A stretch of 64,000 bases of DNA, from the NCBI GenBank assembly GCA_002269645.1, contig NIVC01000491.1, positions 62,001 to 126,000 of the forward strand, written 5' to 3'. Numbering within the stretch: position 1 is the stretch's first letter; each line of letters begins with the position of its first letter. The stretch comes from Macrostomum lignano (lineage: Eukaryota). The notes under the pieces were generated by a model that was not told the origin of the DNA, ran no database searches, and saw only the letters and a list, made by a program, of their open reading frames with translations. Shown here in pieces: positions 15,519-61,961 of this stretch. Position numbers and translations under genes: made by a program.

Positions 15519-18500
15519 GATGAATAAATTAAATGCAAACAAACAAGCTGAAAGATAATTTAGTTATAGTTATAGCGAAGCGAAGATGGCAGGTTCATTC
15601 GCCTGATATATGTCGCTAATGCTTCTGTGAAGTTGAGAGAGTTCGTTTAATATACACTGGCGAAGAAAGAAAATACAATCAGAATCTTGCAATCTATCTG
15701 AAGTAATCTAATTGGACGAAAAGTTTTGTGGAGTTCAAAAGATTGTCTAAGAGTTTTCGTGCTAATTTTTGAAAAGCATATTCGTTATAAAATAGTATTC
15801 AACTTATTTTAAAGCTTTTAAAATTACTTTCGTTTAAAAACGTTTTAGCTAAGCTTTTTTGTTTGTTATACCACGCAAATATTTAGCAAATTTTAAGCTC
15901 GTGAAATACGGAGAAAAAATCTTGCAAATTGCAGCTTGTACTCCCCTTGAGGGCCTCGCCCACAACGGCGCGAGTTTGAGCTTGTGGTAAATGATGGATA
16001 TAATTACTAATGCTTATATCTTGCTAATACCTGTTCATAATTTTAAATTGGAATATTTTCAACGTTTATTTGATATTTTTTTATCTCCGTTTCGATTATT
16101 AATCAATAATCAACCATTGCGTTGATAAGTCTTAAATTATACTTCTTAAAACCTTAAGACGAAGTGAAGACATAAACATGCTAGCCTTCATGCCACATGG
16201 TCAAGATAAGTAATAAAAAAGTTATCAAACTAAAATTAACAATGTAGTATTTTTATTTTTTTTAAATCAACATCTTATTCTTAGTAATGTATTTTGTTTT
16301 GCTTTATTTTTAAGTAGACTATCATGATCTGATGATCATTAATCTTAGGCCTAGGCCTATGAGTATGAGTAAGCCTAATAATTATTAATATTTTCGATTT
16401 AGGCTAATATTACTTGTATTTAGGCCTATCCATTTCATTTCTATGCTAAATAGTGAATAGCTAGGGGCCTAATATAATTTTGCTTTTTCAACTATCTAAC
16501 TATGTCTAAGCTGGGTCTGGGTCTAAACTTAAAGGCTAAGTATTACATTTATAAAAAATAGAAATAAAATTTTATATTATGAATATAATCCACTTTGGTA
16601 ATAGCCATTTTGGTAAAAGCCACCAGTAATAGTAGTGTGTAGATTTATGACTGTCAATAATAGGCCTAGTTTATATGTATAGTTATTAAGTTTAGCAATA
16701 ATTAGTTTATTAGTTAACATTTCAAATATCTTATTGCCACAAAAGGTTAAATTTTATAATTAAACTGTATTATAATTTGTTTAAACTTGCATGTTAATTC
16801 TGTAAAAAGTTTGAAGGTAACAAAAATTAAACCATGCAAGCTTGCATATATTGAAAATAAAATTTTTAAATAATTAATAAAGAAAAAAGTAGATTCTATA
16901 ATTTTAAGTTGCTATTTGCTAACTAGATCAGGGATTCTAATATATGTACAATATATAATATTTAGTTAATTAGAGGGATGTCTTGGTGTATCATATATCT
17001 AACTCATCTAGAAATTAAAATAGATTGGTTAAAACACTTTAAACAAGTAAACACATATAGATATGCATATATTTTGTTGTTCTTTTTAAAATTTTGTTTG
17101 CACATTCTTTTGGAGCATATCAATGAATATATACTATTCTCACTTGTTACCAAAGTGGCTATTATTGAAATGGCTATTACTGAAATTGAAATGGACTATT
17201 ACCTAATATTATTAGGCCTATTGCTTAGGCCAGGTCAGGAATTAGCCAAAATATTTGCAGCAATATTTGGTCAGATGACTAAACTAAAGTTTAGTAGAAA
17301 GATAGGAAGCCTAGTTTCTTAGAATTTTTTTAAAGGTAGGTTCTAAAAAATACACTATAAAGATAAGAAGTTTTCATTTTTCAGCACAAATTTTTTTATT
17401 GCTTTTGATAGGAGGCAGATCCAGTGTTTATCGTTTGATATGTTATGCCTTACTTATTGCTCTATTGAGATTTGTAAGCTTTTCATTCAAAGAATTTGGA
17501 TTCTATATTAATTTTTATTCAAGGCTATGTACATTTCTTGTATCTAACAATCATAAAAATGCATGGCATGGCACCAACCTTAGGTTTTATAAATATATTT
17601 TATCATCTATGGTACAAATATTTGTTACACAATACTAAACCTCTCTAACCTATAGAAGTTTCAGAAGTCTATAGACTTTATGCTTTTAGATTACTCAAAT
17701 TCGGCAGTTGATAGAAATCTTAATACTTTCAGTGGGTTATAACTTAATTGTTAGAGTAATAGAAGTATAATTGAAAAGTTGCTTGTTTGATTCTTGACCC
17801 ACTTGGAACAATTTGTATCTTTGAGCAAGACATTTAATTCTGTTGCTTTAGCTCACCATGCTATAAAGTGGGTATTAGTGAGGTGGGGATAGAGAATAGA
17901 AATAAGAATATGACAGTCATCTATAGTTCTGACACTAAGGAGGGGTGGTTTACTATATTCAATTTCTACCTGCATTTAGCTTGCACAATAAAGCCAGAAA
18001 AATTATGCAGTTAATTCTTATTATTTCCACCAAGTTACTTTGTTTGCTAGGATCTTCAATTCTAGGGGAGGGTAGTTGAAGTCATAGTTGAGCAGTCATA
18101 AATGGCATGGTCATTCAGATTCTGAGACACCATATGAGTATTCAATGCACCTCAAATAGCTTTAAAGCTTACTATAAGTAGTGTATTGCTGCCACCATGA
18201 TATAATTAATATATGGGATTCTCAGAACTTGCTTAGAGTTGAGAATTGATTATTTTGTGCCCTACAAGCAAAATATTCAAGATAATGTTAGGCTTATTGA
18301 TCAAACAATGCATTAAATATGGGTTATTTAGATTTTTTTTACTGGATAAAGTTCAATTGTTGAGCCAATAATATAGGATGGATTTAGGGGCCATGGTGCA
18401 GAGAGGCAAATTTAGTTGGTGTCTAGTAAGTAATAAAATAATAGCACTAAGCAGAAGAAAGGTTTGAAAAGCAAAAATGGGGAAAAGTTAGTTGTGTCCA

Positions 18501-22462: not shown

Positions 22463-33208
<10,746 letters not shown>

Positions 33209-33333: not shown

Positions 33334-33353
33334 TGTCTGTCTGTCTGTCTTAG

Positions 33354-33426
<73 letters not shown>

Positions 33427-33500
33427 GGCTGTCTGTCTGGTCCGTCTGTCTGTCTGTCTGGCTGGCTGTCTGTCTGGTCCGTCTGTCTGTCTGTCTGTCG

Positions 33501-33540
<40 letters not shown>

Positions 33541-33567
33541 GACTGTCTGTCTGTCTGTCTGTCTTAG

Positions 33568-33600
<33 letters not shown>

Positions 33601-33630
33601 GGCTGTCTGTCTGGTCCGTCTGTCTGTCTG

Positions 33631-33726
<96 letters not shown>

Positions 33727-33727
33727 G

Positions 33728-33767
<40 letters not shown>

Positions 33768-33768
33768 G

Positions 33769-33844
<76 letters not shown>

Positions 33845-33894
33845 GGTCTGTCTGTCTGTCTGTCTGTATGTCTGTCTGTCTGTCTGTCTGTCTG

Positions 33895-33946
<52 letters not shown>

Positions 33947-33947
33947 G

Positions 33948-33979
<32 letters not shown>

Positions 33980-33980
33980 G

Positions 33981-34032
<52 letters not shown>

Positions 34033-34033
34033 G

Positions 34034-34101
<68 letters not shown>
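33334..34101. repeat. (TGTC)n microsatellite downstream of the GART stop
   Basis: Interrupted TGTC run. Confidence 0.95.
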
Positions 34102-34854: not shown

Positions 34855-36620
34855 CACCCAGAGAGTCCCTCATGCGCTCCCACCCTCAGAGAGTTACTCA
34901 TCCCGCCCCCGCCCCCCTCGGAGAGTTACTCATCCGTCCCCCAGAGAGTCACTCATCCGCCCCCCTTAGAGAGTCACTCATCCGCCCCCCTTAGAGAGTC
35001 ACTCATCCGCCCCCCTTAGAGAGTCACTCATCCGCCCCCACCCAGAGAGTCACTCATCCCCCTTAGAGAGTCACTCATCCGCCCCGTCCCCACTCAGAGT
35101 GTCACTCATCCCCCCTCAGAGTGTCACTCTTCCGCCCCGTCCCCACTCAGAGTGTCACTCTTCCGCCCCGTCCCCACTCAGAGTGTCACTCATCCCCCCT
35201 CAGAGTGTCACTCATCCCCCCTCAGAGTGTCACTCATCCGCCCCCCCCCCTCAGAGAGTCACTCATGCGCTCCCACCCAGAGAGTCACTCATCCGTCCCC
35301 CAGAGAGTCACTCATCCGCCCCCCTTAGAGAGTCACTCATCCGTCCCCCAGAGAGTCACTCATCCGCCCCCTTAGAGAGTCACTCATCCGCCCCCCTTAG
35401 AGAGTCACTCATCCGCCCCCTTAGAGAGTCACTCATCCGCCCCCCTTAGAGAGTCACTCATCCGCCCCCACCCAGAGAGTCACTCATCCCCCCTTAGAGA
35501 GTCACTCATCCGCCCCGTCCCCACTCAGAGTGTCACTCATCCCCCCTCAGAGTGTCACTCTTCCGCCCCGTCCCCACTCAGAGTGTCACTCTTCCGCCCC
35601 GTCCCCACTCAGAGTGTCACTCATCCCCCCTCAGAGTGTCACTCATCCCCCCTCAGAGTGTCACTCATCCGCCCCCCCCTCAGAGAGTCACTCATGCGCT
35701 CCCACCCAGAGAGTCACTCATCCGTCCCCAGAGAGTCACTCATCCGCCCCCCTTAGAGAGTCACTCATCCGTCCCCCAGAGAGTCACTCATCCGCCCCCC
35801 TTAGAGAGTCACTCATCCGCCCCCCTTAGAGAGTCACTCATCCGCCCCCCTTAGAGAGTCACTCATCCGCCCCCCTTAGAGAGTCACTCATCCGCCCCCC
35901 TTAGAGAGTCACTCATCCGCCCCACCCAGAGAGTCACTCATCCCCCCTTAGAGAGTCACTCATCCGCCCCGTCCCCACTCAGAGTGTCACTCATCCCCCT
36001 CAGAGTGTCACTCTTCCGCCCCGTCCCCACTCAGAGTGTCACTCTTCCGCCCCGTCCCCACTCAGAGTGTCACTCATCCCCCCTCAGAGTGTCACTCATC
36101 CCCCCTCAGAGTGTCACTCATCCGCCCCCCCCCCCTCAGAGAGTCACTCATGCGCTCCCACCCAGAGAGTCACTCATCCGCCCCCTTAGAGAGTCACTCA
36201 TCCGCCCCCCTTAGAGAGTCACTCATCCGCCCCCCGTCAGAGAGTCACTCATCCCCCCGTCAGAGTCACTCATCCCCCCGTCAGAGAGTCACTCATCTAC
36301 CCGTCAGAGAGTCACTCATCCCCCCGTCAGAGTCACTCATCTACCCGTCAGAGAGTCACTCATCCCCCCGTCAGAGAGTCACTCATCCCCCCCGTCAGAG
36401 TCACTCATCTACCCGTCAGAGAGTCACTCATCCCCCCGTCAGAGAGTCACTCATCCCCCCCGTCAGAGAGTCACTCATCCCCCCGTCAGAGTCACTCATC
36501 CCCCCGTCAGAGAGTCACTCATCTACCCGTCAGTGAGTCACTCATCCCCCCGTCAGAGAGTCACTCATCCCCCCGTCAGAGTCACTCATCCCCCGTCAGA
36601 GTCACTCATCCCCCGTCAGA
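34855..36620. repeat. Minisatellite AGAGAGTCACTCATCCGCCCCCCTT with ~431 bp higher-order duplication
   Basis: Near-identical ORF translations offset by 431 nt (35099/35530; 35121/35552). Confidence 0.92.
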
Positions 36621-36757
36621 GCGCTTTTCTGCTTTTCTCTCGTATCTAGGAAATTTCTTAAGCATTGACAATGAGGCAAATAAAGTAGCCGTCAATTCAA
36701 TCCACTATTTATTATTTTGCAGCTGGCAAACAATTCAAACTCGATCCAAGCCAAGCA

Positions 36758-38984: not shown

Positions 38985-40140
38985 AACCTGAGAATCGGTC
39001 ATAAACATACTATGAGAATCGTTCATAAACCCAACCTGAGAATCGGTCATACACCCACCTTGATAATCGGTCATAAACATACTATGATAATGGGTCATAA
39101 ACCCAACCCGAGAATCGATCATAAACCCAACCTGAGAATCGGTCATAAACACAACCTGAGAATCGGTCATAAACACAACCTGAGAATCGGTCATAAACCC
39201 AACCTGAGAATGGGTCATACACCCACCTTGATAATCGGTCATAAACATACTATGATAATGGGTCATAAACCCAACCCGAGAATCGATCATAAACCCAACC
39301 TGAGAATCGGTCATAAACCCAACCTGAGAATCGGTCATAAACACAACCTGAGAATCGGTCATAAACACAACCTGAGAATCGGTCATAAACCCAACCTGAG
39401 AATCGGTCATAAACCCAACCTGAGAATCGGTCATAAACACAACCTGAGAATCGGTCATAAACACAACCTGAGAATCGGTCATAAACCCAACCTGAGAATG
39501 GGTCATACACCCACCTTGATAATCGGTCATAAACATACTATGATAATGGGTCATAAACCCAACCCGAGAATCGATCATAAACCCAACCTGAGAATCGGTC
39601 ATAAACCCAACCTGAGAATCGGTCATAAACACAACCTGAGAATCGGTCATAAACACAACCTGAGAATCGGTCATAAACCCAACCTGAGAATCGGTCATAA
39701 ACCCAACCTGAGAATCGGTCATAAACACAACCTGAGAATCGGTCATAAACCCAACCTGAGAATCGGTCATAAACCCAACCTGAGAATGGGTCATACACCC
39801 ACCTTGATAATCGGTCATAAACATACTATGATAATGGGTCATAAACCCAACCCGAGAATCGGTCATAAACCCAACCTGAGAATCGGTCATAAACACAACC
39901 TGAGAATCGGTCATAAACCCAACCTGAGAATCGGTCATAAACACAACCTGAGAATCGGTCATAAACACAACCTGAGAATCGGTCATAAACACAACCTGAG
40001 AATCGGTCATAAACCCAACCTGAGAATCGGTCATAAACCCAACCTGAGAATCGGTCATAAACACAACCTGAGAATCGGTCATACACCCAACCTGAGAATC
40101 GGTCATAAACCCACTTTGAGAATCGGTCATAAACCGCCTT
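38985..40140. repeat. 24 bp satellite GAGAATCGGTCATAAAC(C/A)CAACCT with 288 bp higher-order unit
   Basis: Near-identical ORFs offset by 288 nt = 12 x 24 (39250/39538). Confidence 0.95.
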
Positions 40141-41783: not shown

Positions 41784-42199
41784 TAACTGCCAACTTTAAA
41801 TAATAGTTTCTCAGAAAGCTTTTTTGGGTGTACAAGGTGTATGCTTACACGTACATTAATTTTCGTTGCGTTTCGTATTCCTATTTACAGAATCGCTGCA
41901 GTTGTGGTCTTCGACCTGAGTCGTGTGGACACATTCGAAGCCGTTTCTAAGGTAAGGTCTAAGGTGTATAAGGTTCTATTTAATTTTCATCAAATTTTTG
42001 TGTGTTTGAAATATTTCCCATTAGTACTACAGCAAAGCGGAGATATTTCTCAAGATAATTAATAGTAACTTGCAGTTCCACCGCTGCTCTGTTTCCATTC
42101 GCAGTGGGTGCAGGACGTTCACGACAAAGTGATGCTGGAGGATGAGTCCCGCATACCTGTTGTACTTCTGGCTAATAAGGTGAGTGCGGGCTTTCTGTC

Positions 42200-42234
<35 letters not shown>

Positions 42235-42297
42235 TTCTGTCTGTCTGTGTGTGTGTGTGTGTCTGTCTGTCTATCTGTCTGTCTCTCTGTCTGTCTA

Positions 42298-42344
<47 letters not shown>

Positions 42345-42345
42345 G

Positions 42346-42439
<94 letters not shown>

Positions 42440-42470
42440 GTGTGTGTCTGTCTGTCTGTCTGTCTGTCTC

Positions 42471-42503
<33 letters not shown>

Positions 42504-42504
42504 G

Positions 42505-42543
<39 letters not shown>

Positions 42544-42614
42544 GTGTCTGTCTCTCTGTCTGTCTTTCTGTCTGTCTGTGTGTGTGTGTGTCTGTCTGTC
42601 TGTCTGTCTGTCTC

Positions 42615-42653
<39 letters not shown>

Positions 42654-42720
42654 GCCTGCCTGCCTGCCTGCCTGTCTGTCTGTCTGTCCTTCTGTCTTAG
42701 TGTCTGTCTTAGTGTCTGGC

Positions 42721-42773
<53 letters not shown>

Positions 42774-42800
42774 GTCTGTCTTTCTGTCTGTCTGTGTGTG

Positions 42801-42839
<39 letters not shown>

Positions 42840-43264
42840 GTGTCTGTCTGTCTGTCTGTCTGCCTGCCTGTCTGTCTGTCAATCTTATGTCTGTCTGTCT
42901 GTCTGTCAGTCTGTCTGTCTGTCAATCTTAATGTCTGTCTGTCTGTCTGCTCAGCCTGCCGTCGTTCCCACCACCCCATCAGTCGGACCTGATGCAGCAC
43001 CAGATCTCAGACGACAGTATCGAATCGCTGAGCCGTCAGCTGGGCGCTGTCTGCTGGTTCAAAGTCAGCGCCAAAGACAACACTGGCATCGATGAGGCCT
43101 TCCTAACCCTTGTCGGTCGAGTTGTGAAAATTTCCTCGGCTTCGACTAGTTTGTCTGTCGGTGCCGGCGGCAGGTCAGGCGTTGTCAGTCTTGGCGAAGC
43201 TTCCGCTGGTGGCGGTTCTATGGGATCGAGATTCTCTTCTAGCAGCATTGGTTGCTGTTTCTAA
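40182..43264 (+). CDS. Rab32/38/29-family small GTPase, 231 aa
   Basis: Exons 40182-40402, 41350-41406, 41891-41951, 42105-42179, 42983-43264 (696 nt; phases 2,2,0,0). G1 GEVAVGKT, G2 [10 protein letters not shown]3 [11 protein letters not shown]4 NKSD, G5 VSAK, C-terminal GCCF. The 57-nt exon 2 is absent from the ORF track. An in-frame acceptor at 40169 means the N-terminus could extend further. Confidence 0.92.
40600..41265. repeat. C-rich minisatellite (CCCATTTACCACCTCTTT) in Rab intron 1
   Basis: Tandem copies visible. Confidence 0.88.
42195..42950. repeat. (TGTC)n microsatellite in Rab intron 4
   Basis: Interrupted TGTC/TG/TGCC run. Confidence 0.95.
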
Positions 43265-44158: not shown

Positions 44159-44231
<73 letters not shown>

Positions 44232-44281
44232 AACTACTACTGCTACTACTACTACTACTACTACTACTACAACTACTACTG

Positions 44282-44325
<44 letters not shown>

Positions 44326-44327
44326 GC

Positions 44328-44390
<63 letters not shown>

Positions 44391-44450
44391 AACTACTACT
44401 GCTACTACTACTACTACTACTACAACTACTACTGCTACTACTACTACTGC

Positions 44451-44496
<46 letters not shown>

Positions 44497-44563
44497 GCTA
44501 CTACTACTACTGCTACTACTACTACTACTACTGCTACTACTACTACTACTACTACTACTACTG

Positions 44564-44598
<35 letters not shown>

Positions 44599-44626
44599 GC
44601 TACTACTACTACTACTACTACTACTG

Positions 44627-44664
<38 letters not shown>

Positions 44665-44692
44665 GCTACTACTACTACTACTACTACTACTG

Positions 44693-44730
<38 letters not shown>

Positions 44731-44762
44731 GCTACTACTACTACTACTACTACTGCTACTAC

Positions 44763-44837
<75 letters not shown>

Positions 44838-44841
44838 AACT
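44158..44841. repeat. (ACT)n trinucleotide tract, ~680 bp
   Basis: ACT run with GCT/ACA/AAT interruptions. Confidence 0.97.
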
Positions 44842-45787
44842 AATCCCTAGATTTAAACCCTCTATTAAAATATTCCACCCTCCCCCCCAAAATATTAAAA
44901 ATTGTTAATGTTGGTGCATTCGTTTGTCTTCATCTCTCGCTGATTTTGCGAGCCAACAAGTTTATAAAATCTGACCCTCAGTTGCCTGTCTAGTGTTATT
45001 GTTTCCCAATACTATAAAACAATTAATTCCTCAATTTTTTGGGAGCTTTAGATGATATTTTCGCTGTTAACCTGCTGCTACCAGCTTAGAATTCAATAAA
45101 AGTTTATAACAAGATCAGAGAATGTCTGGCTTCCATTGCTGTGGCTCTGATGCCTAATTTGTCATTATCTCTGTTGGTTTTTTCTGCTTCTGCAAATGCC
45201 ACTTATTCTGGTGCTACCCGATTTGGGTTAAGTGTGCGTGTGCAGGTAAAACTGTGGTGTAAACTATTTTTGCCTTCATGATACTACTTTTATAAGTAGG
45301 TGACAATTGAGTTTTCTTTAATTTTTATGAAGTTCTTTAATTTTTATGACAATTTGCTTTTCTTCTACTATAAGTAATTTTTCACAAATTGGTGCTTAAT
45401 GCGCGTGAGAAAAAAGTGACTGCGCAGTCGGCTGCGCCTTGCAGAGAGCACGATTAAAGTTCTATTTGTTTGTTTCTGCTTATTTAATGGTTTCTAAAGT
45501 TTTTTCGATGCATATCTTCAAATTAAATTTAAAGAAATTTTGACCAGTAATCATTACTCCTGACAAAAATCGTAATGGCTTTAATTTTTACTATTGTTTC
45601 TCAATGCGGTTGGCAATATAAATAAAATAAAACAGATTATGTTTGGCCTGTCTAATTTGGAAAATTTGAGTTGCTTTTGTTTATTATTTGATGCTTTTGT
45701 TGTGTACTAGCATTGGTTTTAGAATATGGAAATCTGTGTATGCATCTATCGATTCTGTGCAGTCTGGGTTATTAGTGAGAACTGTTC

Positions 45788-46155
<368 letters not shown>

Positions 46156-47410: not shown

Positions 47411-48084
47411 TAGTTTAACAATTCTTGTGCGCTGTAGGTGGGAAAATAATTATCAAGAAAGTGCACTCAATAGTCTACTTGCTCAGATCCTTGAGTCCTT
47501 GTTTGTATTAAAATTCTTCAATAATGGTGAAGTGCAATTCCACAGACATTGCAAAGGACAAACGCTGTTAGCTTAATGCATAGCAAGTTTTGTTTATATG
47601 CTCTTAGAAATTGATTGATTGCACATGAATTCATCATTCTGTGATAGAAGTACTTTGATTAGCCTAGGTTTTTTTCTAACTACGAGCGTAGTTACTATCT
47701 GAGAAACTATATGGCGTAATTAATAATTAATTTAATGTAGTAGATAATCAGCTGATAAATTTAGCTCTGAATCAGTAAAGGTGCTATTTCATTTACTCTA
47801 GGCTTATCTATATCGTAAACATTGTAATGTAAAATAGCTCCCACTAATGCTCAGTTGTTGTTCTTAACTTAGCACATTCTTCATTTTGAGTTACTGAGGG
47901 CAGAGTGGGGCCACATGGGATTGCGATCCTGCTGCTGCTGGGCACCCTCCAGCAGTCACATGGCTCTGGCCTCGGTGCATATCTTATGTTATTGTGTCCC
48001 TAGCGTATTGGCTGCTAGTGTTTATCATTGTCATGATACTCTTAGTAACTTGCAGTTCCACCACTGCTCTGCTTCCATTCGCAG

Positions 48085-48806
<722 letters not shown>

Positions 48807-48864
48807 TCGTGGCCTTTGTGTTGGGAAAATTTTCCCCAGATGTAAGAGACTATGTTAGCTCTCT

Positions 48865-48970
48865 ATTGGCTCAGCGGCTTCATTGGCTGCCGTGTCTTCC
48901 CTTATTCTCAGTCTCCCTCTCTCCATTCAACAAGCCTATAAAACTGCCTCCCTGACTGCCTGCTCAGCTC
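48865..48970 (+). promoter_or_regulatory. Putative core promoter of the secreted peptide gene (2x CCAAT, TATA, Inr)
   Basis: ATTGG at 48865 and 48882, TATAAAA at 48937-48943, and Inr-like TCAGCT with its A at 48966, 29 nt after the TATA start and 120 nt upstream of the ATG. Confidence 0.55.
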
Positions 48971-49085
48971 TCTTCGCTGCCAACTATTTTGTTATCGAAA
49001 TTGAGGCGAGTTTTCCAACAGGAAACGACATTTTACGCTGGTTAATTATTTGTGATTATAAAAATATAAGCTCTAGTTGAGGCCA

Positions 49086-49645
49086 ATGTCTCGCTTTGTT
49101 GTTCTGTCTCTGGCGGCCCTGCTGCTTGTGTCAACTCTGTTGGTTTCGTCTGCTTCTGCCGCCGCTGCTGCTTCTGGCGGTCCGCCGAGTCGCCCGTCGG
49201 CGGCCAGCAGCGCCAGGCAGTCGCAGTCGGCGATTGTTGAAGACGAGAACGCCGACGATTCTGCCATCCTACCGTTGGAATATTTCCCGCTAATGGAGCC
49301 CCATCATCGCTGCCTGTTTGTCTGCCGCTACTGCTACCAGCATAATGTAAATGCAATTTTCTTCTCTCTTAACACTACTGACTTGAATAAGTAGGCAATT
49401 AGCAAATTAACATAAAAAATTTTATTGCATTCACAAATTTTTACGACAATATGTTTTTATCCTACTATGAGTAGTTTTTTTTTCAAAAAACGAGAAATAT
49501 TCCGTTTCAGACCGCCGGCCTGCTGCACTGTGCCAACAATTGGTGCCTGGCCCGCGTTAAGAACATGCTGGAACTGCCGCGTAGCGCCTACCGGGAGTGC
49601 CCGGCCATGGGCCTGGTTGACTTGGCCGGTCGGAACGTCGCTTAA
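49086..49645 (+). CDS. Secreted six-cysteine peptide precursor, 131 aa (eclosion-hormone-like candidate)
   Basis: Exons 49086-49346 and 49511-49645 (phase 0, AAT|gtaaat ... tttcag|ACC). Signal-peptide-like MSRFVVLSLAALLLVSTLLVSSASA, an acidic spacer, then CLFVCRYCYQHNTAGLLHCANNWCLARVKNMLELPRSAYRECPAMG. Confidence 0.8.
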
Positions 49646-50115
49646 TTAAATGGGAACTTGTGAACCTGCCGACTCCGAACTATTTAAACAGTAGCGCTGA
49701 CAATACGGATGAGACCATTTTTAACAACAAGTGCGCCGCGCGATAGCGGAGAATGCAAACCCAGAATAAGCACGAGAGGTGATTATATTTTCGAAAGAAA
49801 GTTTTTTTCGATACATATCGTACGGTAAGAATAATATCAAAATATATTAATAATCAAGGCTAATCACCTCTGGTAGCTTCTAAACATTTGTAATAACATT
49901 ATTATTAACATTATTGGTCAATGCGGTTGGCAAAATAATAAAGCAGATTCCGTTTCGTCTGTAATGTTTGGCAAAATTATTTGTTTTGTTTGAATTATTT
50001 CACTTCACTGTATTTAGAATATGGAATGTGTGTAGGAATCCTGACCGAGCTCCGGCTATAGATTGCCTGGGTTTTTCGGTGGGACCTGTCATAATTGACA
50101 GCTCTACTGTATCTG

Positions 50116-51252: not shown

Positions 51253-51336
51253 TCTCAATAAAAACGTGAATTATTATCACGCTCAATTGATGCCCTAATT
51301 TTCACACGAGCACCAGTTACACAAACGGCACAAACA

Positions 51337-51822
51337 ATGTCCGGTTGCCTTGACAACGTTCGCCTACCAAAATGCGACTGCTCAGCGGTGCGGCCGTATC
51401 GCAATTTAATCTCCAGCATTCTGGGCGGCTGCCTCGTCTCCATCGGCTGGTGGATCATGATCGATGCAGCCGCTGGTTATCCGTCGCAGTCGGAGATGCA
51501 CCACGCGGTGCACACGTGCGGAGTGCTGGCTACTGTAGCGGTGTTCATGGTTAACTCTATTAGCAATGGCCAGGTGACTGGCAGTGACACCTACACTGAC
51601 GGCTGCTTTGGGCAGAATGCTGCCAGACTGTGGCTATTCTTGGGCTTCATCTTGGCTTTCGGATCGCTGATTGCATCAGTTTGGATTCTATTTGGCGTGT
51701 ACGTTGGGCCGCAGAAGTCTCCTATGTGGCCGGGTGTTGCTATCTTCCTGCAGAATGGCTTTATCTTTGCCGGCAATATGATCTTTAAATTTGGTCGCTC
51801 AGAGGAGTTGTGGGACGACTAA
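51337..51822 (+). CDS. TMEM50: Transmembrane protein 50 (UPF0220/Vps68 family), 161 aa, single coding exon
   Basis: GWWIMIDAA, HTCGVLAT, VNSISNGQV, GCFGQNAARLWLFLGF, FLQNGFIF, KFGRSEELW match TMEM50A/B end to end. Confidence 0.95.
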   Translation: MSGCLDNVRLPKCDCSAVRPYRNLISSILGGCLVSIGWWIMIDAAAGYPSQSEMHHAVHTCGVLATVAVFMVNSISNGQVTGSDTYTDGCFGQNAARLWLFLGFILAFGSLIASVWILFGVYVGPQKSPMWPGVAIFLQNGFIFAGNMIFKFGRSEELWDD

Positions 51823-52102
51823 TTAGAGTCGAAATACGCAACTCTGCACAGCGTTAAAAATTTAGCGTCAAAACCTGTAGACAAAACTGGAATTGACATA
51901 ACTATTTTTCTATATGCTTATGATTATTGAAATCTGTGGCGATTGTTGTACCTCTCTTGTAAATTATTTCTGTTTATATGTCGTATGTCTCTTTTTGCTG
52001 CTTTCAAAACAAAGCTTCTTTTAAAAATAAGATACCTACTTACCAGCAGAAATTTGATCTTAACTTACTCACTTTTTTGAAGTCCTCATCCTAAAAATTG
52101 AC

Positions 52103-53045
52103 TCTAATCCACCCTGAGAATCGGCTCTAATCCACCCTGAGAATCGGCTCTAATCCACCCTGAGAATCGGCTCTAATCCACCCTGAGAATCGGCTCTAAT
52201 CCACCCTGAGAATCGGCTCTAATCCTCCCTGAGAATCGGCTCTAATCCTCCCTGAGAATCGGCTCTAATCCACCCTGAGAATCGGCTCTAATCCACCCTG
52301 AGAATCGGCTCTAATCCACTCTGAGAATCGGCTCTAATCCACCCTGAGAACCGGCTCTAATCCACCCTGAGAATCGGCTCTAATCCACCCTGAGAATCGG
52401 CTCTAATCCACCCTGAGAATCGGCTCTAATCCACCCTGAGAATCGGCTCTAATCCACCCTGAGAATCGGCTCTAATCCACCCTGAGAATCGGCTCTAATC
52501 CACCCTGAGAATCGGCTCTAATCCACCCTGAGAATCGGCTCTAATCCACCCTGAGAATCGGATCAAATCCACACTGAGAATCGGCTCTAATCCACCCTGA
52601 GAATCGGCTCTAATCCACCCTGAGAATCGGCTCTAATCCACCTGAGAACCGGCTCTAATCCACATTGAGAATCGGCTCTAATCCACCCTGAGAATCGGCT
52701 CTAATCCACATTGAGAATCGGCTCTAATAAATTCTTAGAATCGGCTCTAATCCACCCTGAGAATCGGCTCTAATCCACCCTGAGAATCGGCTCAAATCCA
52801 CACTGAGAATCGGCTCTAATCCACCCTTAGAATCGGCTCTAATCCACCCTGAGAATCGGCTCTAATCCACCTGAGAACCGGCTCTAATCCACATTGAGAA
52901 TCGGCTCTAATAAATTCTTAGAATCGGCTCTAATCCACCCTGAGAATCGGCTCTAATCCACCCTGAGAATCGGCTCTAATAAATTCTTAGAATCGGCTCT
53001 AATCCACCCTGAGAATCGGCTCTAATCCACCCTGAGAATCGGCTC
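52103..53045. repeat. 23 bp satellite GAGAATCGGCTCTAATCCACCCT (array 1, ~40 copies)
   Basis: Same unit as 58797-61680. Confidence 0.96.
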
Positions 53046-53504
53046 TGTTGTATTTAAAAAATAGTTTCTTAAATCAAGGGCATTCAATTAAATCATTTCG
53101 TGACAGAAAAACTTGTATTCTTCAAAATATTCAGTTTTCTTGTTAACCTGAATTATAGATTTTTAGCTATTAAGCATCAATTTGCTTGCTAAGAATAAAA
53201 TTGTAGTTTTGTTACCGTTTATCCTGACTTGGCTTTCTTATTGGCCTAAGAAAGTTAATTCGTTTTGGGCACAAAATTTGTGTATTAAATATTTCTTGTG
53301 TAATCACATTGAGTGCTTTACTGTTTATTGTCAATAATTTTTGTCGATTTTACAGAATAATCATTCTGTTTCAATAATCTCTGTAGCGGTTTTTTGAAAC
53401 GTTTTAATTCTGTCATGGGTTCTGAGGCATCTATTCAGTAAGGGTAAGACTTTGAAAATTGTAACAATTAAACAAACTTAGAATGAAACCAGCAATCTAG
53501 TGCC

Positions 53505-55848: not shown

Positions 55849-56204
55849 AGCACTAAAATTCGAGCCGTTAGCCTCGCCGCAGGCGGCAGCTGGACTAGCT
55901 TCATCATCGCTACTAGATGGAGCTTAACAACCCACGGTGTTGTAGCAACTCGATTCGGGCATCACCATCAGCAGCATCTGCTGCATCGCTGCTGGCTCAG
56001 CTCTGCCTCGCGTAGAAACCGGCCAAACTATCCTGCGCTGGATGAGTCCGCTATTCGTGAGCAGTTTGTGAGCGGCTCCGGCCCCGGCGGGCAGAAGATT
56101 AACAAGACTCAGAATAAGGTGAAATTCTATATTGTAGAGACTGTAGCCTGTGTAGGCGTAGTTTTGATATCCAATTCTACAGACAGACAGACAGACAGAC
56201 AGTC

Positions 56205-56252
<48 letters not shown>

Positions 56253-56318
56253 CAGACGGACAGACAAGACAGATAGTCAGACAGACAGACACTAAGACAG
56301 ACACTAAGACAGACACTA

Positions 56319-56369
<51 letters not shown>

Positions 56370-56382
56370 TAGACAGACAGTC

Positions 56383-56423
<41 letters not shown>

Positions 56424-56446
56424 GGCAGGCAGACAGACAGCCAGAA

Positions 56447-56519
<73 letters not shown>

Positions 56520-56522
56520 CTA

Positions 56523-56585
<63 letters not shown>

Positions 56586-56618
56586 TAGACAGACAGACAG
56601 ACAGACCGACAGACAGAC

Positions 56619-56655
<37 letters not shown>

Positions 56656-56678
56656 GGCAGGCAGACAGACAGCCAGAA

Positions 56679-56743
<65 letters not shown>

Positions 56744-56746
56744 CTA

Positions 56747-56809
<63 letters not shown>

Positions 56810-57409
56810 TAGACAGACAGACAGACGGACGGACAGACAGACAGACAGACAGGTAGATTCAGCATCATCGCGTGAACACGTTTCCCAGTGTAACCATATC
56901 TCAATTCGGTGCTTCTCTTTGTTTAAGTCTATCTAATCTCGTTCCTCTCATCCATTCTCTTATCGACTTAACTATCATTATCTAACCTACGTAGTGACAT
57001 CTATCCTCATTTCCTCTCATCTACTCTCTACTCATCCCTTCTCATCTACTCTCATCAATTCTCATATAATATGTTCTCTTCCCAGGTAGTCCTGACCCAC
57101 CTGCCCACGGGCACTGTGGTGCACTGCCAGGAAACCAGGTCCCTACACGAGAATCGTCAAATCGCCCGTCGCCGCCTTCAAGAGAAGCTGGACGTTCTCA
57201 TCAACGGCGAACACGCCGCCTCGGTGGTGGCCGAACGAGAGCGTCGAGCTCAGGACCGCTACGAGCACGGCAGGAGCGTGTCCCGGCTGCAGATGAAACT
57301 GCGACTCAAAGAGGAGCTCGCAAATCGGCTGCCGCAGCGGCTGGAGACGCCTCCGAGCATGGACGAGGGTGGCGAAGCTGATAGTAACAGCGGCTCTGAT
57401 GGTCGATGA
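55849..57409 (+). CDS. MTRFR: Mitochondrial translation release factor in rescue (C12orf65), GGQ peptidyl-tRNA hydrolase
   Basis: Exons 55849-56118 and 57086-57409 (phase 0). [20 protein letters not shown]|[36 protein letters not shown], followed by a basic C-terminal helix. The start codon is unresolved because there is no in-frame ATG (see findings). Confidence 0.9.
56180..56851. repeat. (GACA)n microsatellite in the MTRFR intron
   Basis: Interrupted GACA run. Confidence 0.95.
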
Positions 57410-58425: not shown

Positions 58426-58796
58426 GATGTCTATTCTCACCCCCCCCCCCAAAATCTTCTATTTTATCTTGGCCCGTAGATTTTAATCACAACTTACCCA
58501 CAGATCTCGATCTTATCCCATCTAGTATATCTCCTATCGCATCTCACCCTTCCCTTAGATCTCCTATCTTTAATGTCGCTGATCTTCAACTTACGTTTTA
58601 ACCAGTGTCTTTCAATTTGAAATACTCTGGCACTGCCAATAACTTGTACAGAATCTGGTATTTGAATTTGGTAATCATTAAAATAAATATACACGACTGA
58701 CCTAATAACAGATTCAATTGTCAAGGTGTGCCTGTTTTGGCTTGTAAATTCGTGTCTTCGGCATTGAGATTACCTGATTATTGATTATCAGTTGGC

Positions 58797-61680
58797 GCTA
58801 ATCCACCCTGAGAATCGGCTCTAATCCACCCTGAGGATCGGCTCTAATCCACCTGAGAATCGGCTCTAATCCACTCTGAGAATCGGCTCTAATCCACCCT
58901 GAGAATCGGCTCTAATCCACCCTGAGAATCGGCTCTAATCCACCTTGAGAATCGGCTCTAATCCACCCTGAAAATCGACTCTAATCCACCCTGAGAACCG
59001 GCTCTAATCCACCCTGAGGATCGGCTCTAATCCACCTGAGAACCGGCTCTAATCCACTCTGAGAATCGGCTCTAATCCACCCTGAGAATAGGCTCTAATC
59101 CACCCTGAGAATCGGCTCTAATCCACCCTGAGAATCGGCTCTAATCCACCCTGAGAATAGGCTCTAATCCACCCTGAGAATCGGCTCTAATCCACCCTAA
59201 AAAATCGGCTCTAATCCAACCTGAGAATCGGCTCTAATCCACCTGAGAATCGGCTCTAATCCACCCTGAGAATAGGCTCTAATCCACCCTGAGAATAGGC
59301 TCTAATCCACCCTGAGAATAGGCTCTAATCCACCCTGAGAATCGACTCTAATCCACCCTGAGAATCGGCTCTAATCCACCCTAAAAAATCGGCTCTAATC
59401 CAACCTGAGAATCGGCTCTAATCCACCTGAGAATCGGCTCTAATCCACCCTGAGAATCGGCTCTAATCCACCCTGAGAATAGGCTCTAATCCACCCTAAG
59501 AATCGGCTCTAATCCACCCTGAGAATCGGCTCTAATCCACCCTGAGGATCGGCTCTAATCCATATTAAGAATCGGCTCTAATCTACATTGAGAATCGGCT
59601 CTAATCCACCCTGAGAATCGGCTCTAATCCACCCTGAGAATAGGCTCTAATCCACCCTGAGAATCGGCTCTAATCCATCTTGAGAATCGGCTCTAATCCA
59701 CCCTGAAAATCGACTCTAATCCACCCTGAGAATCGGCTCTAATCCACCCTGAGAATCGGCTCTAATCCACCTGAGAACCGGCTCTAATCCACCCTGAGAA
59801 TCGGCTCTAATCCACCCTGAGAATAGGCTCTAATCCACCTGAGAATCGGCTCTAATCCACTTTGAGAATCGGCTCTAATCCACCCTGAGAATCGGCTCTA
59901 ATCCACCCTGAGAATCGACTCTAATCCACCTTGAGAATCGGCTCTAATCCACCCGAGAACCGGCTCTAATCCACCTGAGAACCGGCTCTAATCCACCCTG
60001 AGAATCGGCTCTAATCCACCTTGAGAATCGGCTGTAATCCACCCTGAGAATCGGCTCTAATCCACCCTGAGAATCGGCTCTAATTCAACCTGAGAATCGG
60101 CTCTAATCCACCCTGAGAATCGGCTCTAATCCACCCTGAGAATCGGCTCTAATCCACCCTGAGAATCGGCTCTAATCCACCCTGAGGATCGGCTCTAATC
60201 CACCCTGAGAATCGGCTCTAATCCACCCTGAGAATCGGCTCTAATCCACCCTGAGAGTCGGCTCTAATCCACCCTGAGAATCGGCTCTAATCCACCCTGA
60301 GAATCAGCTCTAATCCACCCTGAGGATCGGCTCTAATCCACCCTGAGAATCGGCTCTAATCCACCCTGAGAATCGGCTCTAATCCACCCTGAGAATCGGC
60401 TCTAATCCACCCTGAGAATCGGCTCTAATCCACCCTGAGAATCAGCTCTAATCCACCCTGAAAATCGGCTCTAATCCACCCTGAGAATCGGCTCTAATCT
60501 ACTCTGAGAATCAGCTCTAATCCACCCTGAGAATCGGCTCTAATCCACCCTGAGAATCGACTCTAATCCACCCTGAGAATCGGCTCTAATCCACCCTGAG
60601 AATCGGCTCTAATCCACCCTGAGAATCGGCTCTAATCCACCCTGAGAATCGGCTCTAATCCACCCTGAGAATCAGCTCTAATCCACCCTGAGGATCGGCT
60701 CTAATCCACCCTGAGAATCGGCTCTAATCCACCCTGAGAATCGGCTCTAATCCACCCTGAGAATCGGCTCTAATCCACCCTGAGAATCGGCTCTAATCCA
60801 TCCTGAGAATCGGCTCTAATCCACCCTGAGAATCGGCTCTAATCCATCTTGAGAATCGGCTCTAATCCACCCTGAGAATCGGCTCTAATCCATCCTGAGA
60901 ATCGGCTCTAATCCACCCTGAGAATCGGCTCTAATCCACCCTGAGAATCGGCTCTAATCCACCCTGAGAATCGGCTCTAATCCACCCTGAGAATCGGCTC
61001 TAATCCACCCTGAGAATCGGCTCTAATCCACCCTGAGAATCAGCTCTAATCCACCCTGAGAATCGGCTCTAATCCACCCTGAGAATCGGCTCTAATCTAC
61101 TCTGAGAATCGGCTCTAATCCACCCTGAGAATCGGCTCTAATCCACCCTGAGAATCGACTCTAATCCACCCTGAGAATCGGCTCTAATCCACCCTGAGAA
61201 TCGGCTCTAATCTACCCTGAGAATCGACTCTAATCCACCCTGAGAATCGGCTCTAATCCACCCTGAGAATCGGCTCTAATCCACATTGAGAATCGGCTCT
61301 AATCCACCCTGAGAATCGGCTCTAATCCACCATGAGAGTCGGCTCTAATCCACCCTGAGAATCGGCTCTAATCCACCCTGAGAATCGGCTCTAATCCACC
61401 CTGAGAATCGGCTCTAATCCACCCTGAGAATCGGCTCTAATCCACCCTGAGAATCAGCTCTAATCCACATTGAGAATCGGCTCTAATCCACCCTGAGAAT
61501 CGGCTCTAATCCACCCTGAGAATCGGCTCTAATCCACCCTGAGAATCGGCTCTAATCCACCCTGAGAATCGGCTCTAATCCACATTGAGAATCGGCTCTA
61601 ATCCACCCTGAGAATCGGCTCTAATCCACCTTGGGAATCAGCTCTAATCCACCCTGAGAATCAGCTCTAATCCACCCTCA
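58797..61680. repeat. 23 bp satellite GAGAATCGGCTCTAATCCACCCT (array 2, ~125 copies)
   Basis: About 2.9 kb homogeneous array between convergent genes. Confidence 0.97.
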
Positions 61681-61961
61681 TAATCCAAATGCTGTAATAA
61701 AAGAGTTGATAAGCAAGACTTGTTAAAGCAACAGCTTCATCAAGGTATATTAGTGTAGCAGTATAAAGCAAAACCAAACAAAAAAATCCGAGCAAAAACT
61801 TGGCTCCAGCTCTCTCGTTGTTGCAGAAATACAGAAGAAAAAATAGAAATTTCTTCAGCAGCTATAGGAATCATGTGAAGTGGTTTTTAATAACCGATTA
61901 GTTGTAGTTAATCCTTGGCTTATAGCAGTCAAATCGCAATCACTTTGTCGGGCATCCGGCA

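What the first reader, a model, noticed from the sequence alone, without database searches (positions are those of the whole stretch)
49086..49645. Unannotated secreted peptide with eclosion-hormone-like six-cysteine framework
Seen: signal peptide, acidic spacer and a C-x3-C-x2-C-x10-C-x4-C-x17-C domain assembled across a phase-0 intron, so it is invisible in the ORF track. A CCAAT/TATA/Inr promoter lies upstream. Established: insect eclosion hormone has C-x3-C-x2-C-x12-C-x3-C-x10-C, and EH-like peptides occur in some non-moulting phyla. Local echoes include HCANNWC vs LCAESC and RECP vs PECE. Inference: a divergent EH-family neurohormone in a non-arthropod, probably a flatworm, or a new disulfide-rich hormone family. 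There is no dibasic cleavage site before the domain, and two of the spacings differ from EH, so the assignment is tentative.
Basis: partly seen in the sequence, partly recalled or inferred. Interest (0 to 1): 0.78.

Follow-up and report, generated by a model that had tools for sequence, protein, structure and literature searches.

The report
Flatworm-only secreted six-cysteine protein gene
This is a real, already annotated two-exon gene of the flatworm Macrostomum lignano that encodes a small secreted six-cysteine protein; it belongs to a four-member family seen only in this species and, beyond part of its cysteine spacing, shows no detectable relationship to insect eclosion hormone.

Summary
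The CDS 49086-49346 + 49511-49645 (GT..AG, phase-0 intron) encodes 131 aa: a signal peptide, an acidic spacer, and a domain with cysteine spacing 3-2-10-4-17. The window is Macrostomum lignano contig NIVC01000491.1.

Exhaustive HMMER searches found only three further relatives, all M. lignano paralogues. They keep the six cysteines and the motifs P-E-FP-M-PWQRCL, LLHCAN-WCL and A---CP. Three of the four groups keep the same phase-0 intron. The homeologous copy gives dN/dS of about 0.17.

Eclosion-hormone (EH) membership is not supported:
- There is no Pfam Eclosion hit.
- EH profiles from arthropods, molluscs, annelids, nemerteans and phoronids score 1-8 bits, no better than cysteine-fixed shuffles.
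- hhalign gives at most 11% probability, against 97% for the EH controls.
- Cys4-Cys5 spacing is 4 in every paralogue and 3 in every EH domain examined.

Best reading: a lineage-restricted secreted, disulfide-locked helical mini-protein, probably an extracellular ligand, with function untested. The proposed promoter is plausible. However, chimeric models and the "g2" name show that some transcripts start upstream, in a duplicated GTPase exon, and use an acceptor at 49077.

The parts
49086..49346 (+). Exon 1 coding part, codons 1-87: signal peptide, spacer, and the first half of the conserved domain including Cys1-Cys3
   Evidence: Identical to GenBank PAA82157.1.
49086..49160 (+). Predicted signal peptide (about residues 1-25, MSRFVVLSLAALLLVSTLLVSSASA). 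The cleavage site is inferred from the -3/-1 rule; SignalP was not run.
   Evidence: Hydropathy maximum 3.1 over 12 aa. UniProt labels the product 'Secreted protein'. All paralogues have an equivalent N-terminus.
49161..49265 (+). Low-complexity Ala/Ser/Pro then acidic spacer (residues 26-60). Its length and sequence vary among paralogues, and it has no dibasic site.
   Evidence: Alignment A1. K/R pair scan.
49266..49346 (+). N-terminal half of the conserved domain (ILPLEYFPLMEPHHRCLFVCRYCYQHN)
   Evidence: Alignments A1 and A2.
49347..49510 (+). Phase-0 GT..AG intron, 164 nt, GC 0.26, lying six residues before Cys4
   Evidence: The same alignment column carries a phase-0 intron in paralogues Mlig004613 (L003) and Mlig010165 (L005).
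49511..49645 (+). Exon 2 coding part: TAGLLHCANNWCL...RECPAMGLVDLAGRNVA plus the TAA stop (49643-49645); carries Cys4-Cys6
49071..49077 (+). 3' splice acceptor CTCTAG|T, 9 nt before the ATG. UniProt chimeric models use it. It is a candidate spliced-leader (SL) trans-splice site.
   Evidence: P0001, P0004 and P0005 read ...LLANK|LRPMSRF. The SL ends in ATG and would be in frame (SL sequence from PMC8629364). Use by the SL itself is inferred.
48085..48159 (+). Duplicated copy of the penultimate exon of the upstream Rab-like GTPase, with intact acceptor and donor. It is spliced to 49077 in chimeric gene models.
   Evidence: The duplicated block 42064-43036 corresponds to 48043-48740.
48800..48943 (+). 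Candidate core promoter: CCAAT at 48800, inverted CCAAT (ATTGG) at 48865 and 48882, TATAAAA at 48937-48943
   Evidence: Motif scan. Function not tested.
49937..49942 (+). First AATAAA downstream of the stop codon (candidate poly(A) signal, giving a 3' UTR of about 300 nt)
   Evidence: Inferred only.

Best explanation
The locus is a genuine, expressed two-exon gene of Macrostomum lignano (BOX15_Mlig014903g2 / PAA82157.1). It encodes a 131-aa secretory precursor with three parts:
- a cleavable signal peptide;
- a variable acidic spacer;
- a conserved domain of about 65 residues, predicted all-helical, whose six invariant cysteines most likely form three disulfides.

It is one of four paralogue groups of a family so far seen only in this species. 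It is not a detectable member of the eclosion-hormone (EH) family or of any other described family.

Proposed mechanism. The steps from here on are inferred, not shown. The protein enters the ER, the signal peptide is removed, and disulfides lock a small helical bundle. Because no dibasic or other conserved convertase site precedes the domain, it is released as an intact protein of about 100 aa rather than being cut into short peptides. Outside the cell it most likely acts as a soluble ligand (hormone, paracrine or pheromone-like factor) for a surface receptor, as other helical three-disulfide proteins of 60-75 aa do (EH, CHH/ITP, attractin).

Transcription. At least some transcripts come from a longer unit that starts at or beyond the duplicated GTPase exon at 48085 and uses the acceptor at 49077, probably with spliced-leader trans-splicing. 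A local TATA/CCAAT promoter may also be used.
For: Gene model:
- It is identical to the transcript-based GenBank annotation on the same contig (method in PMC5730564).

Family:
- phmmer against 1.84 billion representative proteins finds only M. lignano paralogues, at E 3e-10 to 6e-8.
- Invariant residues are R-C-L, C, C, L-C-N, C-L, A and C-P.
- The phase-0 intron sits at the same column in three of four groups.

Constraint:
- Against the homeologous copy there are 8 synonymous and 4 non-synonymous changes, dN/dS 0.17. All replacements lie outside the cysteine core, and the intron is 6.7% divergent.

Secretion:
- All members have a hydrophobic N-terminus, and UniProt labels them 'Secreted protein'.

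Fold:
- AlphaFold2 on the family alignment gives pLDDT 71.5 with 4-5 helices. Cys1-3 lie on one helix and Cys4-5 on the next.

No convertase site:
-.

Not EH:
-.

Upstream transcription:
- Chimeric models P0001, P0004 and P0005 join 48159|49077.
- The 'g2' suffix marks the second gene of a transcriptional unit cut at SL or poly(A) signals.
- The homeologous locus has the GTPase as the upstream gene.
Against: - No expression pattern, receptor or phenotype is known. The ligand role rests only on analogy of size, secretion signal and disulfide-rich helical fold.
- A lineage-restricted multi-copy secreted family fits gland products or defence proteins equally well.
- The structure model has only moderate confidence and rests on five sequences. 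Disulfide pairing was not obtained.
- Signal-peptide cleavage was not predicted with a dedicated tool.
- RNA reads were not inspected directly, so use of the 49077 acceptor by the spliced leader is inferred.
- The family looks species-restricted partly because other macrostomid proteomes are not in the databases searched.
Confidence: 0.55

Rival explanations
1. It is a secreted effector rather than a signal: a product of epidermal, rhabdite, adhesive, pharyngeal or prostate glands (a mucus or structural component, antimicrobial or seminal-fluid protein) that acts directly on the environment, on microbes or on a mating partner.
For: - The family is lineage-restricted with several paralogues at 37-47% identity, which is typical of effector families.
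- There is no convertase processing site.
- Orthologues in the other flatworm proteomes held by the databases are not detectable.
Against: - dN/dS of 0.17 between homeologues indicates purifying rather than diversifying selection.
- The mature protein is roughly neutral in charge and not AMP-like (by inspection).
- None of the family's gene ids appears in the stored parts of the supplementary lists of germline/neoblast genes or of testis/ovary/tail-region genes. This is weak evidence, because some of those files were truncated.
Confidence: 0.3
2. It is a highly derived orthologue or paralogue of eclosion hormone (EH) that signals through a receptor guanylyl cyclase.
For: - It shares C-x3-C-x2-C at the start of a helix, followed by a second helix with two cysteines and a sixth cysteine further on.
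- Two paralogues have the EH-like Cys3-Cys4 spacing of 12.
- A hydrophobic residue follows Cys1, and 'CA' occurs at Cys4.
- EH-type ligands exist in other lophotrochozoans (PMC6660194).
- The published survey did not include Macrostomum.
- Divergent EH subtypes can themselves score low against each other: arthropod against 8-Cys molluscan type gives hhalign 8%.
Against: - No Pfam Eclosion hit.
- Scores of 1.4-7.6 bits against four EH profiles are not better than cysteine-fixed shuffles.
- hhalign probability is at most 11%, with only 9-26 columns aligned.
- Cys4-Cys5 is x4 in all paralogues and x3 in all 40 EH domains. Cys5-Cys6 is 17-18 against 10-14.
- The EH hallmark residues (G-x-x-[FY]-x-G, K/T-G, [PD]-x-C) are absent.
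- The conserved intron between Cys3 and Cys4 is absent from the two arthropod EH genes checked.
- Platyhelminths are not among the phyla that PMC6660194 lists as having the EH ligand or its receptor.
Confidence: 0.08
3. It is an intracellular or organellar metal-binding protein, with CxxxCxxC acting as an Fe-S or zinc ligand set rather than forming disulfides.
For: - CLFVCRYCY resembles the radical-SAM CxxxCxxC motif.
- The best, non-significant, PDB sequence hits are zinc-binding RING and zinc-finger domains (E 0.05-0.06).
Against: - All paralogues have a strong N-terminal signal sequence.
- The domain is far too small for a radical-SAM barrel.
- There is no Pfam hit.
- The RING alignment does not place the metal ligands consistently.
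Confidence: 0.03

Closest known systems
Eclosion hormone family (Pfam PF04736; arthropod EH and the EH-type precursors of molluscs, annelids, nemerteans, phoronids and echinoderms)
   Same: A secreted protein of about 60-70 aa that is all-helical with six cysteines. It begins C-x3-C-x2-C, has a second cysteine pair on the next helix and a distal sixth cysteine. A hydrophobic residue follows Cys1.
   Different: - Cys4-Cys5 is x4, not x3. Cys5-Cys6 is 17-18, not 10-14. Cys3-Cys4 is 9-12, not 12-13.
- None of the conserved non-cysteine EH residues is present.
- There is no profile or profile-profile similarity above cysteine-preserving shuffles.
- A spacer of 35-50 aa and a conserved 15-aa pre-Cys motif (LP-E-FP-M-PWQR) have no EH counterpart.
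- There is an intron inside the cysteine domain.
CHH/ITP/MIH neurohormones (Pfam PF01147)
   Same: Secreted helical hormones of about 72 aa with three disulfides, released without internal cleavage of the cysteine domain.
   Different: The cysteine spacing differs: C-x16-C-x2-C-x12-C-x3-C-x8-C (recalled from memory). There was no Pfam hit at E<=10. The family is known only from ecdysozoans.
Lineage-specific secreted cysteine-rich orphan families of flatworms and other invertebrates (general category)
   Same: Signal peptide plus a small disulfide-rich domain, several paralogues, no homologues outside the lineage, annotated only as 'hypothetical' or 'secreted protein'.
   Different: This particular family (motif RCL-x2-C-x2-C ... 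L-x-C-x-N-x2-CL ... A-x3-CP) is not mentioned in the literature library that could be searched.

Membership tests
Eclosion hormone (PF04736) | Six cysteines spaced C-x3-C-x2-C-x12/13-C-x3-C-x10/11(-14)-C | tested here: not met
   All 40 EH domains from arthropods, an onychophoran, an annelid, nemerteans, molluscs and phoronids (PMC6660194 supplement) have x3 between Cys4 and Cys5 (or CC-x2-C). The window protein has 3, 2, 10, 4, 17 and its paralogues 3, 2, 9-12, 4, 17-18. Only the first two intervals match throughout.
Eclosion hormone (PF04736) | Significant match to the Pfam Eclosion profile (gathering threshold) | tested here: not met
   No Eclosion hit at E<=10 for the full protein or for any of the five domain sequences. 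The EH sequences retrieved as controls all carry PF04736.
Eclosion hormone (PF04736) | Sequence or profile similarity to EH beyond the cysteines | tested here: not met
   - hmmsearch --max with four EH profiles gives 1.4-7.6 bits. The fraction of cysteine-fixed shuffles scoring at least as high is 0.02-0.96, and no result is significant after 16 tests.
- hhalign probability is 0.2-11%. Arthropod against lophotrochozoan EH gives 97.7%, and 6-Cys against 8-Cys gives 96.7%.
Eclosion hormone (PF04736) | Disulfide connectivity C1-C5, C2-C4, C3-C6 (from memory of the Manduca EH literature) and a helical fold | not testable with these tools
No EH structure exists in the PDB, so the Foldseek result says nothing about EH.
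Eclosion hormone (PF04736) | Cognate receptor guanylyl cyclase of the EH-receptor clade present in the genome | not tested
PMC6660194 does not list Platyhelminthes among the phyla with the receptor, but Macrostomum was not in its data set.
Eclosion hormone (PF04736) | Expression in neurosecretory cells | not testable with these tools
   No expression data were retrievable. The gene ids are absent from the main text and from the stored supplements of the papers checked.
CHH/ITP (PF01147) | Profile match and characteristic six-cysteine spacing | tested here: not met
   No Pfam hit at E<=10. The spacing is incompatible (from memory).
New M. lignano six-Cys family (this work) | Signal peptide, then [LI]P-x-E-x-FP-x-M-x-P-[WH]-[QH]-R-C-L-x2-C-x2-C-x9-12-C-x-N-x2-C-L-x12-A-x3-C-P, with a phase-0 intron six residues before Cys4 | tested here: met
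   Alignments A1 and A2. phmmer E 3e-10 to 6e-8 to the paralogues. Intron positions.

The most novel reading that the evidence does not exclude
The family is the long-missing, extremely diverged flatworm branch of the ancient eclosion-hormone system, or an independently evolved helical three-disulfide hormone family. It would act through a receptor guanylyl cyclase or another surface receptor to control a life-cycle or reproductive transition in a non-moulting animal that is amenable to transgenesis.
Probability: 0.08. Interest if true: 0.6.

Novelty: new variant of a known kind. Interest (0 to 1): 0.3.

Why it matters
If the family proves to be a signalling ligand, it would add a flatworm-specific disulfide-rich hormone family to a phylum whose known peptide signals are almost all short amidated peptides. 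Macrostomum lignano is an organism in which transgenic reporters and RNAi can test this quickly.

If it were shown to be a derived eclosion hormone, it would fill the platyhelminth gap in the distribution of the 'moulting' peptide systems described across Metazoa.

As the evidence stands, it is an uncharacterised orphan secreted protein of a sort common in animal genomes, so the immediate value is modest. There are three practical results:
- a corrected family assignment (not EH);
- a defined family signature;
- a warning that UniProt models A0A1I8HMK4, A0A1I8HBB9 and A0A1I8HUL5 are chimeras with a duplicated GTPase exon.

Tried and rejected
- Pfam scans of the full protein and of five domain sequences gave only noise: DUF7096, YbgS, PyrI_C and MAGP at E 0.07-2.6.
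- The word-indexed search of 5.8 billion proteins, with the single sequence and with the family profile, found only M. lignano entries.
- The PDB sequence profile search gave TRIM32 RING and PRDM9 zinc fingers at E about 0.05-0.06. I rejected these as cysteine/low-information matches.
- Foldseek of the pLDDT-71 model against the PDB gave no match with E<7. No EH structure exists in the PDB, so this could not test EH.
- The single-sequence AlphaFold model (pLDDT 59) was not used for fold search.
- Full-text searches for the five gene ids and for family peptide motifs gave zero papers.
- Supplement searches in PMC8629364, PMC5816591, PMC5730564, PMC7336406 and PMC10092323 gave no entry for the family genes. 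The only hit was an unrelated neighbour, Mlig025664.g3.
- Looking for a Logan or ENA transcript contig carrying the exact protein returned only the GenBank genome contigs.
- The radical-SAM/Fe-S reading of CxxxCxxC was rejected because of the signal peptide and the small size.
- The C-terminal 'G-R' as an amidation site was rejected as a family feature, because only this paralogue has it.
- tblastn for further family copies in the window found none.

Full report
**1. What is in the sequence**

The region is eukaryotic. An ATG at 49086 opens a 261-nt exon that ends at 49346 (AAT|GTAAAT). A 164-nt AT-rich intron follows, with GC 0.26 against 0.59 and 0.64 in the exons. It ends in TTTCAG|, and a second exon runs from 49511 to the TAA at 49643-49645. 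The intron is phase 0.

The 131-aa product is MSRFVVLSLAALLLVSTLLVSSASA / AAAASGGPPSRPSAASSARQSQSAIVEDENADDSA / ILPLEYFPLMEPHHRCLFVCRYCYQHN|TAGLLHCANNWCLARVKNMLELPRSAYRECPAMGLVDLAGRNVA.

**2. Source and annotation status**

- The only hit in the 5.8-billion-protein index is a Macrostomum lignano cluster. Its members include GenBank PAA82157.1 (BOX15_Mlig014903g2) and PAA77600.1 (BOX15_Mlig010651g2), both 131 aa, and UniProt 'Secreted protein' entries.
Its contig, NIVC01000491.1 of assembly GCA_002269645.1, matches the window base for base over the 20.5 kb retrieved.
- That annotation was derived solely from RNA-seq and transcript assemblies (StringTie/TACO plus a de novo transcriptome, cut at spliced-leader and poly(A) signals). 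This gives indirect transcript support for the splice junction (PMC5730564).
- The gene is therefore real and already annotated as a hypothetical protein.

**3. A small family restricted to this species**

An exhaustive phmmer search of the C-terminal 83 residues against 1.84 billion representative proteins found four proteins. These were the query's own cluster and three others (E 3e-10 to 6e-8), all from M. lignano: Mlig025664g1, Mlig004613g1/g2 and Mlig010165g1.

- All have a signal-type N-terminus, a variable low-complexity spacer and the same domain. The invariant residues are R-C-L, C, C, L-x-C-x-N, C-L, A and C-P. A conserved pre-cysteine motif, LP-x-E-x-FP-x-M-x-PWQR, is also present.
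- Mlig004613 and Mlig010165 carry a phase-0 intron at the same alignment column as the window gene, six residues before Cys4. Mlig025664g1 is intronless.
- The homeologous copy on NIVC01000733.1 lies in the same gene order: Rab-like GTPase, this gene, UPF0220 gene.
- That copy differs by 8 synonymous and 4 non-synonymous codon changes (Nei-Gojobori dN/dS 0.17). All four replacements lie outside the cysteine core, and the intron differs at 6.7% of sites. This points to purifying selection on a functional protein.

**4. Test of the eclosion-hormone (EH) reading**

- Pfam: no Eclosion hit at E<=10 for the precursor or any domain sequence.
- First alignment: I retrieved 68 EH proteins, all PF04736-positive, and aligned 19 of them. 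hhalign against the family alignment gave probability 0.96% over 20 columns.
- Broader EH set: that first set was only Lepidoptera and aphids, so I took EH-type ligands from the supplement of De Oliveira et al. 2019 (PMC6660194). This gave 40 domains from insects, collembolans, arachnids, an onychophoran, an annelid, nemerteans, molluscs and phoronids.
- Cysteine spacing: every one of those domains has Cys4-x3-Cys5 (or CC-x2-C), Cys3-Cys4 of 12-13 (rarely 16-18) and Cys5-Cys6 of 10-14. The four M. lignano paralogues have 9-12, always 4, and 17-18.
- Profile scores: with all HMMER filters off, EH profiles score the family at 1.4-7.6 bits. The EH subtypes score each other at medians of 10-32 bits.
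- Shuffle control: real family sequences do not beat shuffles that keep the cysteines in place. They do beat full shuffles. The only shared signal is therefore the partial cysteine frame.
- hhalign on the broad alignments: 0.2-11% probability over 9-26 columns. Arthropod against lophotrochozoan 6-Cys EH gives 97.7%, and 6-Cys against 8-Cys lophotrochozoan EH gives 96.7%.
- Limit of the test: arthropod EH against the 8-Cys type gives only 8%. Very diverged members can escape it, but those two are linked through intermediates, and the flatworm family has none.
- Gene structure: in a butterfly EH gene the whole cysteine domain is one exon, and an aphid EH gene has no intron. The family's conserved intron is therefore not shared. 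This is weak evidence.
- Literature: Platyhelminthes are not among the phyla that the published survey lists for the EH ligand or receptor. Macrostomum was not in its data.
- Conclusion: membership in the EH family is not supported, though a very remote relationship cannot be excluded.

**5. Other comparisons**

- A PDB profile search returned only zinc-binding RING and zinc-finger domains at E about 0.05-0.06. Such matches are expected for a cysteine-rich query.
- AlphaFold2 on the family alignment gave pLDDT 71.5 and four to five helices. Cys1-3 lie on the first long helix and Cys4-5 on the next.
- Foldseek against the PDB found nothing with E<7. The PDB has no EH structure, so this does not bear on EH.
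- No paper in the searchable library mentions the gene ids or the family motifs.

**6. Transcription context**

About 0.93 kb upstream lies a 92%-identical duplicate (48043-48627 against 42064-42663) of a block from the Rab-like GTPase gene. The block holds that gene's penultimate exon together with its flanking (TCTG)n intron. The duplicated exon (48085-48159) keeps perfect splice signals. A decayed copy of the first 60 nt or so of the last GTPase exon follows, ending at 48740.

- UniProt models A0A1I8HMK4, A0A1I8HBB9 and A0A1I8HUL5 splice this duplicated exon to an acceptor at 49076|49077, nine bases before the ATG. This yields [16 protein letters not shown]|LRPMSRF....
- In the Mlig_3_7 naming scheme, 'g2' marks the second gene of a transcriptional unit cut at trans-splice or poly(A) signals.
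- The M. lignano spliced leader ends in ATG (PMC8629364). Joined at 49077 it would be in frame and give MLRPMSRF....
- The acceptor CTCTAG differs from the enriched YTNCAG motif.
Their spacing is sensible.
- Their use, and use of the acceptor by the spliced leader, could not be tested without reads. Both routes may operate.

**7. Interpretation**

Shown:
- a real, constrained gene;
- a secretory-type precursor;
- a conserved six-cysteine helical domain;
- a family restricted, in current databases, to one flatworm;
- no membership in EH or any other described family.

Inferred: signal-peptide cleavage near residue 25, three disulfides, release as an unprocessed protein of about 100 aa (no dibasic site), and an extracellular role.

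I favour a soluble ligand. The reasons are purifying selection, a conserved surface motif ahead of the cysteines, and size and fold like EH, CHH or attractin-type factors. This rests on analogy only. A gland-derived effector is nearly as likely. Interest is modest: the EH idea, which carried most of the original score, fails the tests that could be run.

Noticed in passing
window 48043-48740 vs 42064-43036: A segmental duplicate of part of the upstream Rab-like GTPase gene sits just 5' of the peptide gene. The duplicated part covers the penultimate exon with intact splice sites, the (TCTG)n intron and the first ~60 nt of the last exon. It explains the chimeric UniProt models A0A1I8HMK4, A0A1I8HBB9 and A0A1I8HUL5.
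   Followed up: yes
window 49077-49088: If the 35-nt M. lignano spliced leader, which ends in ATG, is trans-spliced at the AG at 49076, its ATG is in frame with the ORF and would add MLRP to the N-terminus.
   Followed up: partly
L002:6001-6312 (NIVC01001259.1): The paralogue Mlig025664g1 is intronless, whereas the other three groups share a phase-0 intron. This could be intron loss or a retrocopy. It lies between an RNA polymerase subunit gene and a Nudix gene.
   Followed up: partly
window 49622-49642: Only this paralogue has a C-terminal extension, DLAGRNVA. It contains a Gly-Arg that could in principle be a monobasic cleavage and amidation site. It is not conserved in the family.
   Followed up: partly
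window 51298-51822 and 55861-57409: The downstream neighbours are a UPF0220 (TMEM50-like) gene and an RF-1-domain (peptidyl-tRNA hydrolase-type) gene. The order GTPase, peptide, UPF0220 is conserved on the homeologous contig NIVC01000733.1.
   Followed up: partly
window, throughout (e.g. 58794-61685, 34909-36621, 29098-30295, 38985-40135, 52102-53046): The window is exceptionally dense in minisatellites, with 14-43-nt units in tens to more than 100 copies. A related 23-24-nt unit (...AATCCACCCTGAGAATC...) recurs at several sites. These arrays create many long spurious ORFs.
   Followed up: no
window 44159-44842; 26228-26670; 33334-34101; 42200-42949; 45788-46155; 48171-48630; 56179-56852: Long microsatellites are present: (CTA)228 and many (TCTG/CTGT/ACAG)n arrays of 90-190 copies. 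These give the 'CLSV' and 'DRQT' pseudo-ORFs that flank the gene.
   Followed up: no
window 16001-18000: There is a sharp drop in G+C to 0.28, against about 0.45 elsewhere in the window.
   Followed up: no
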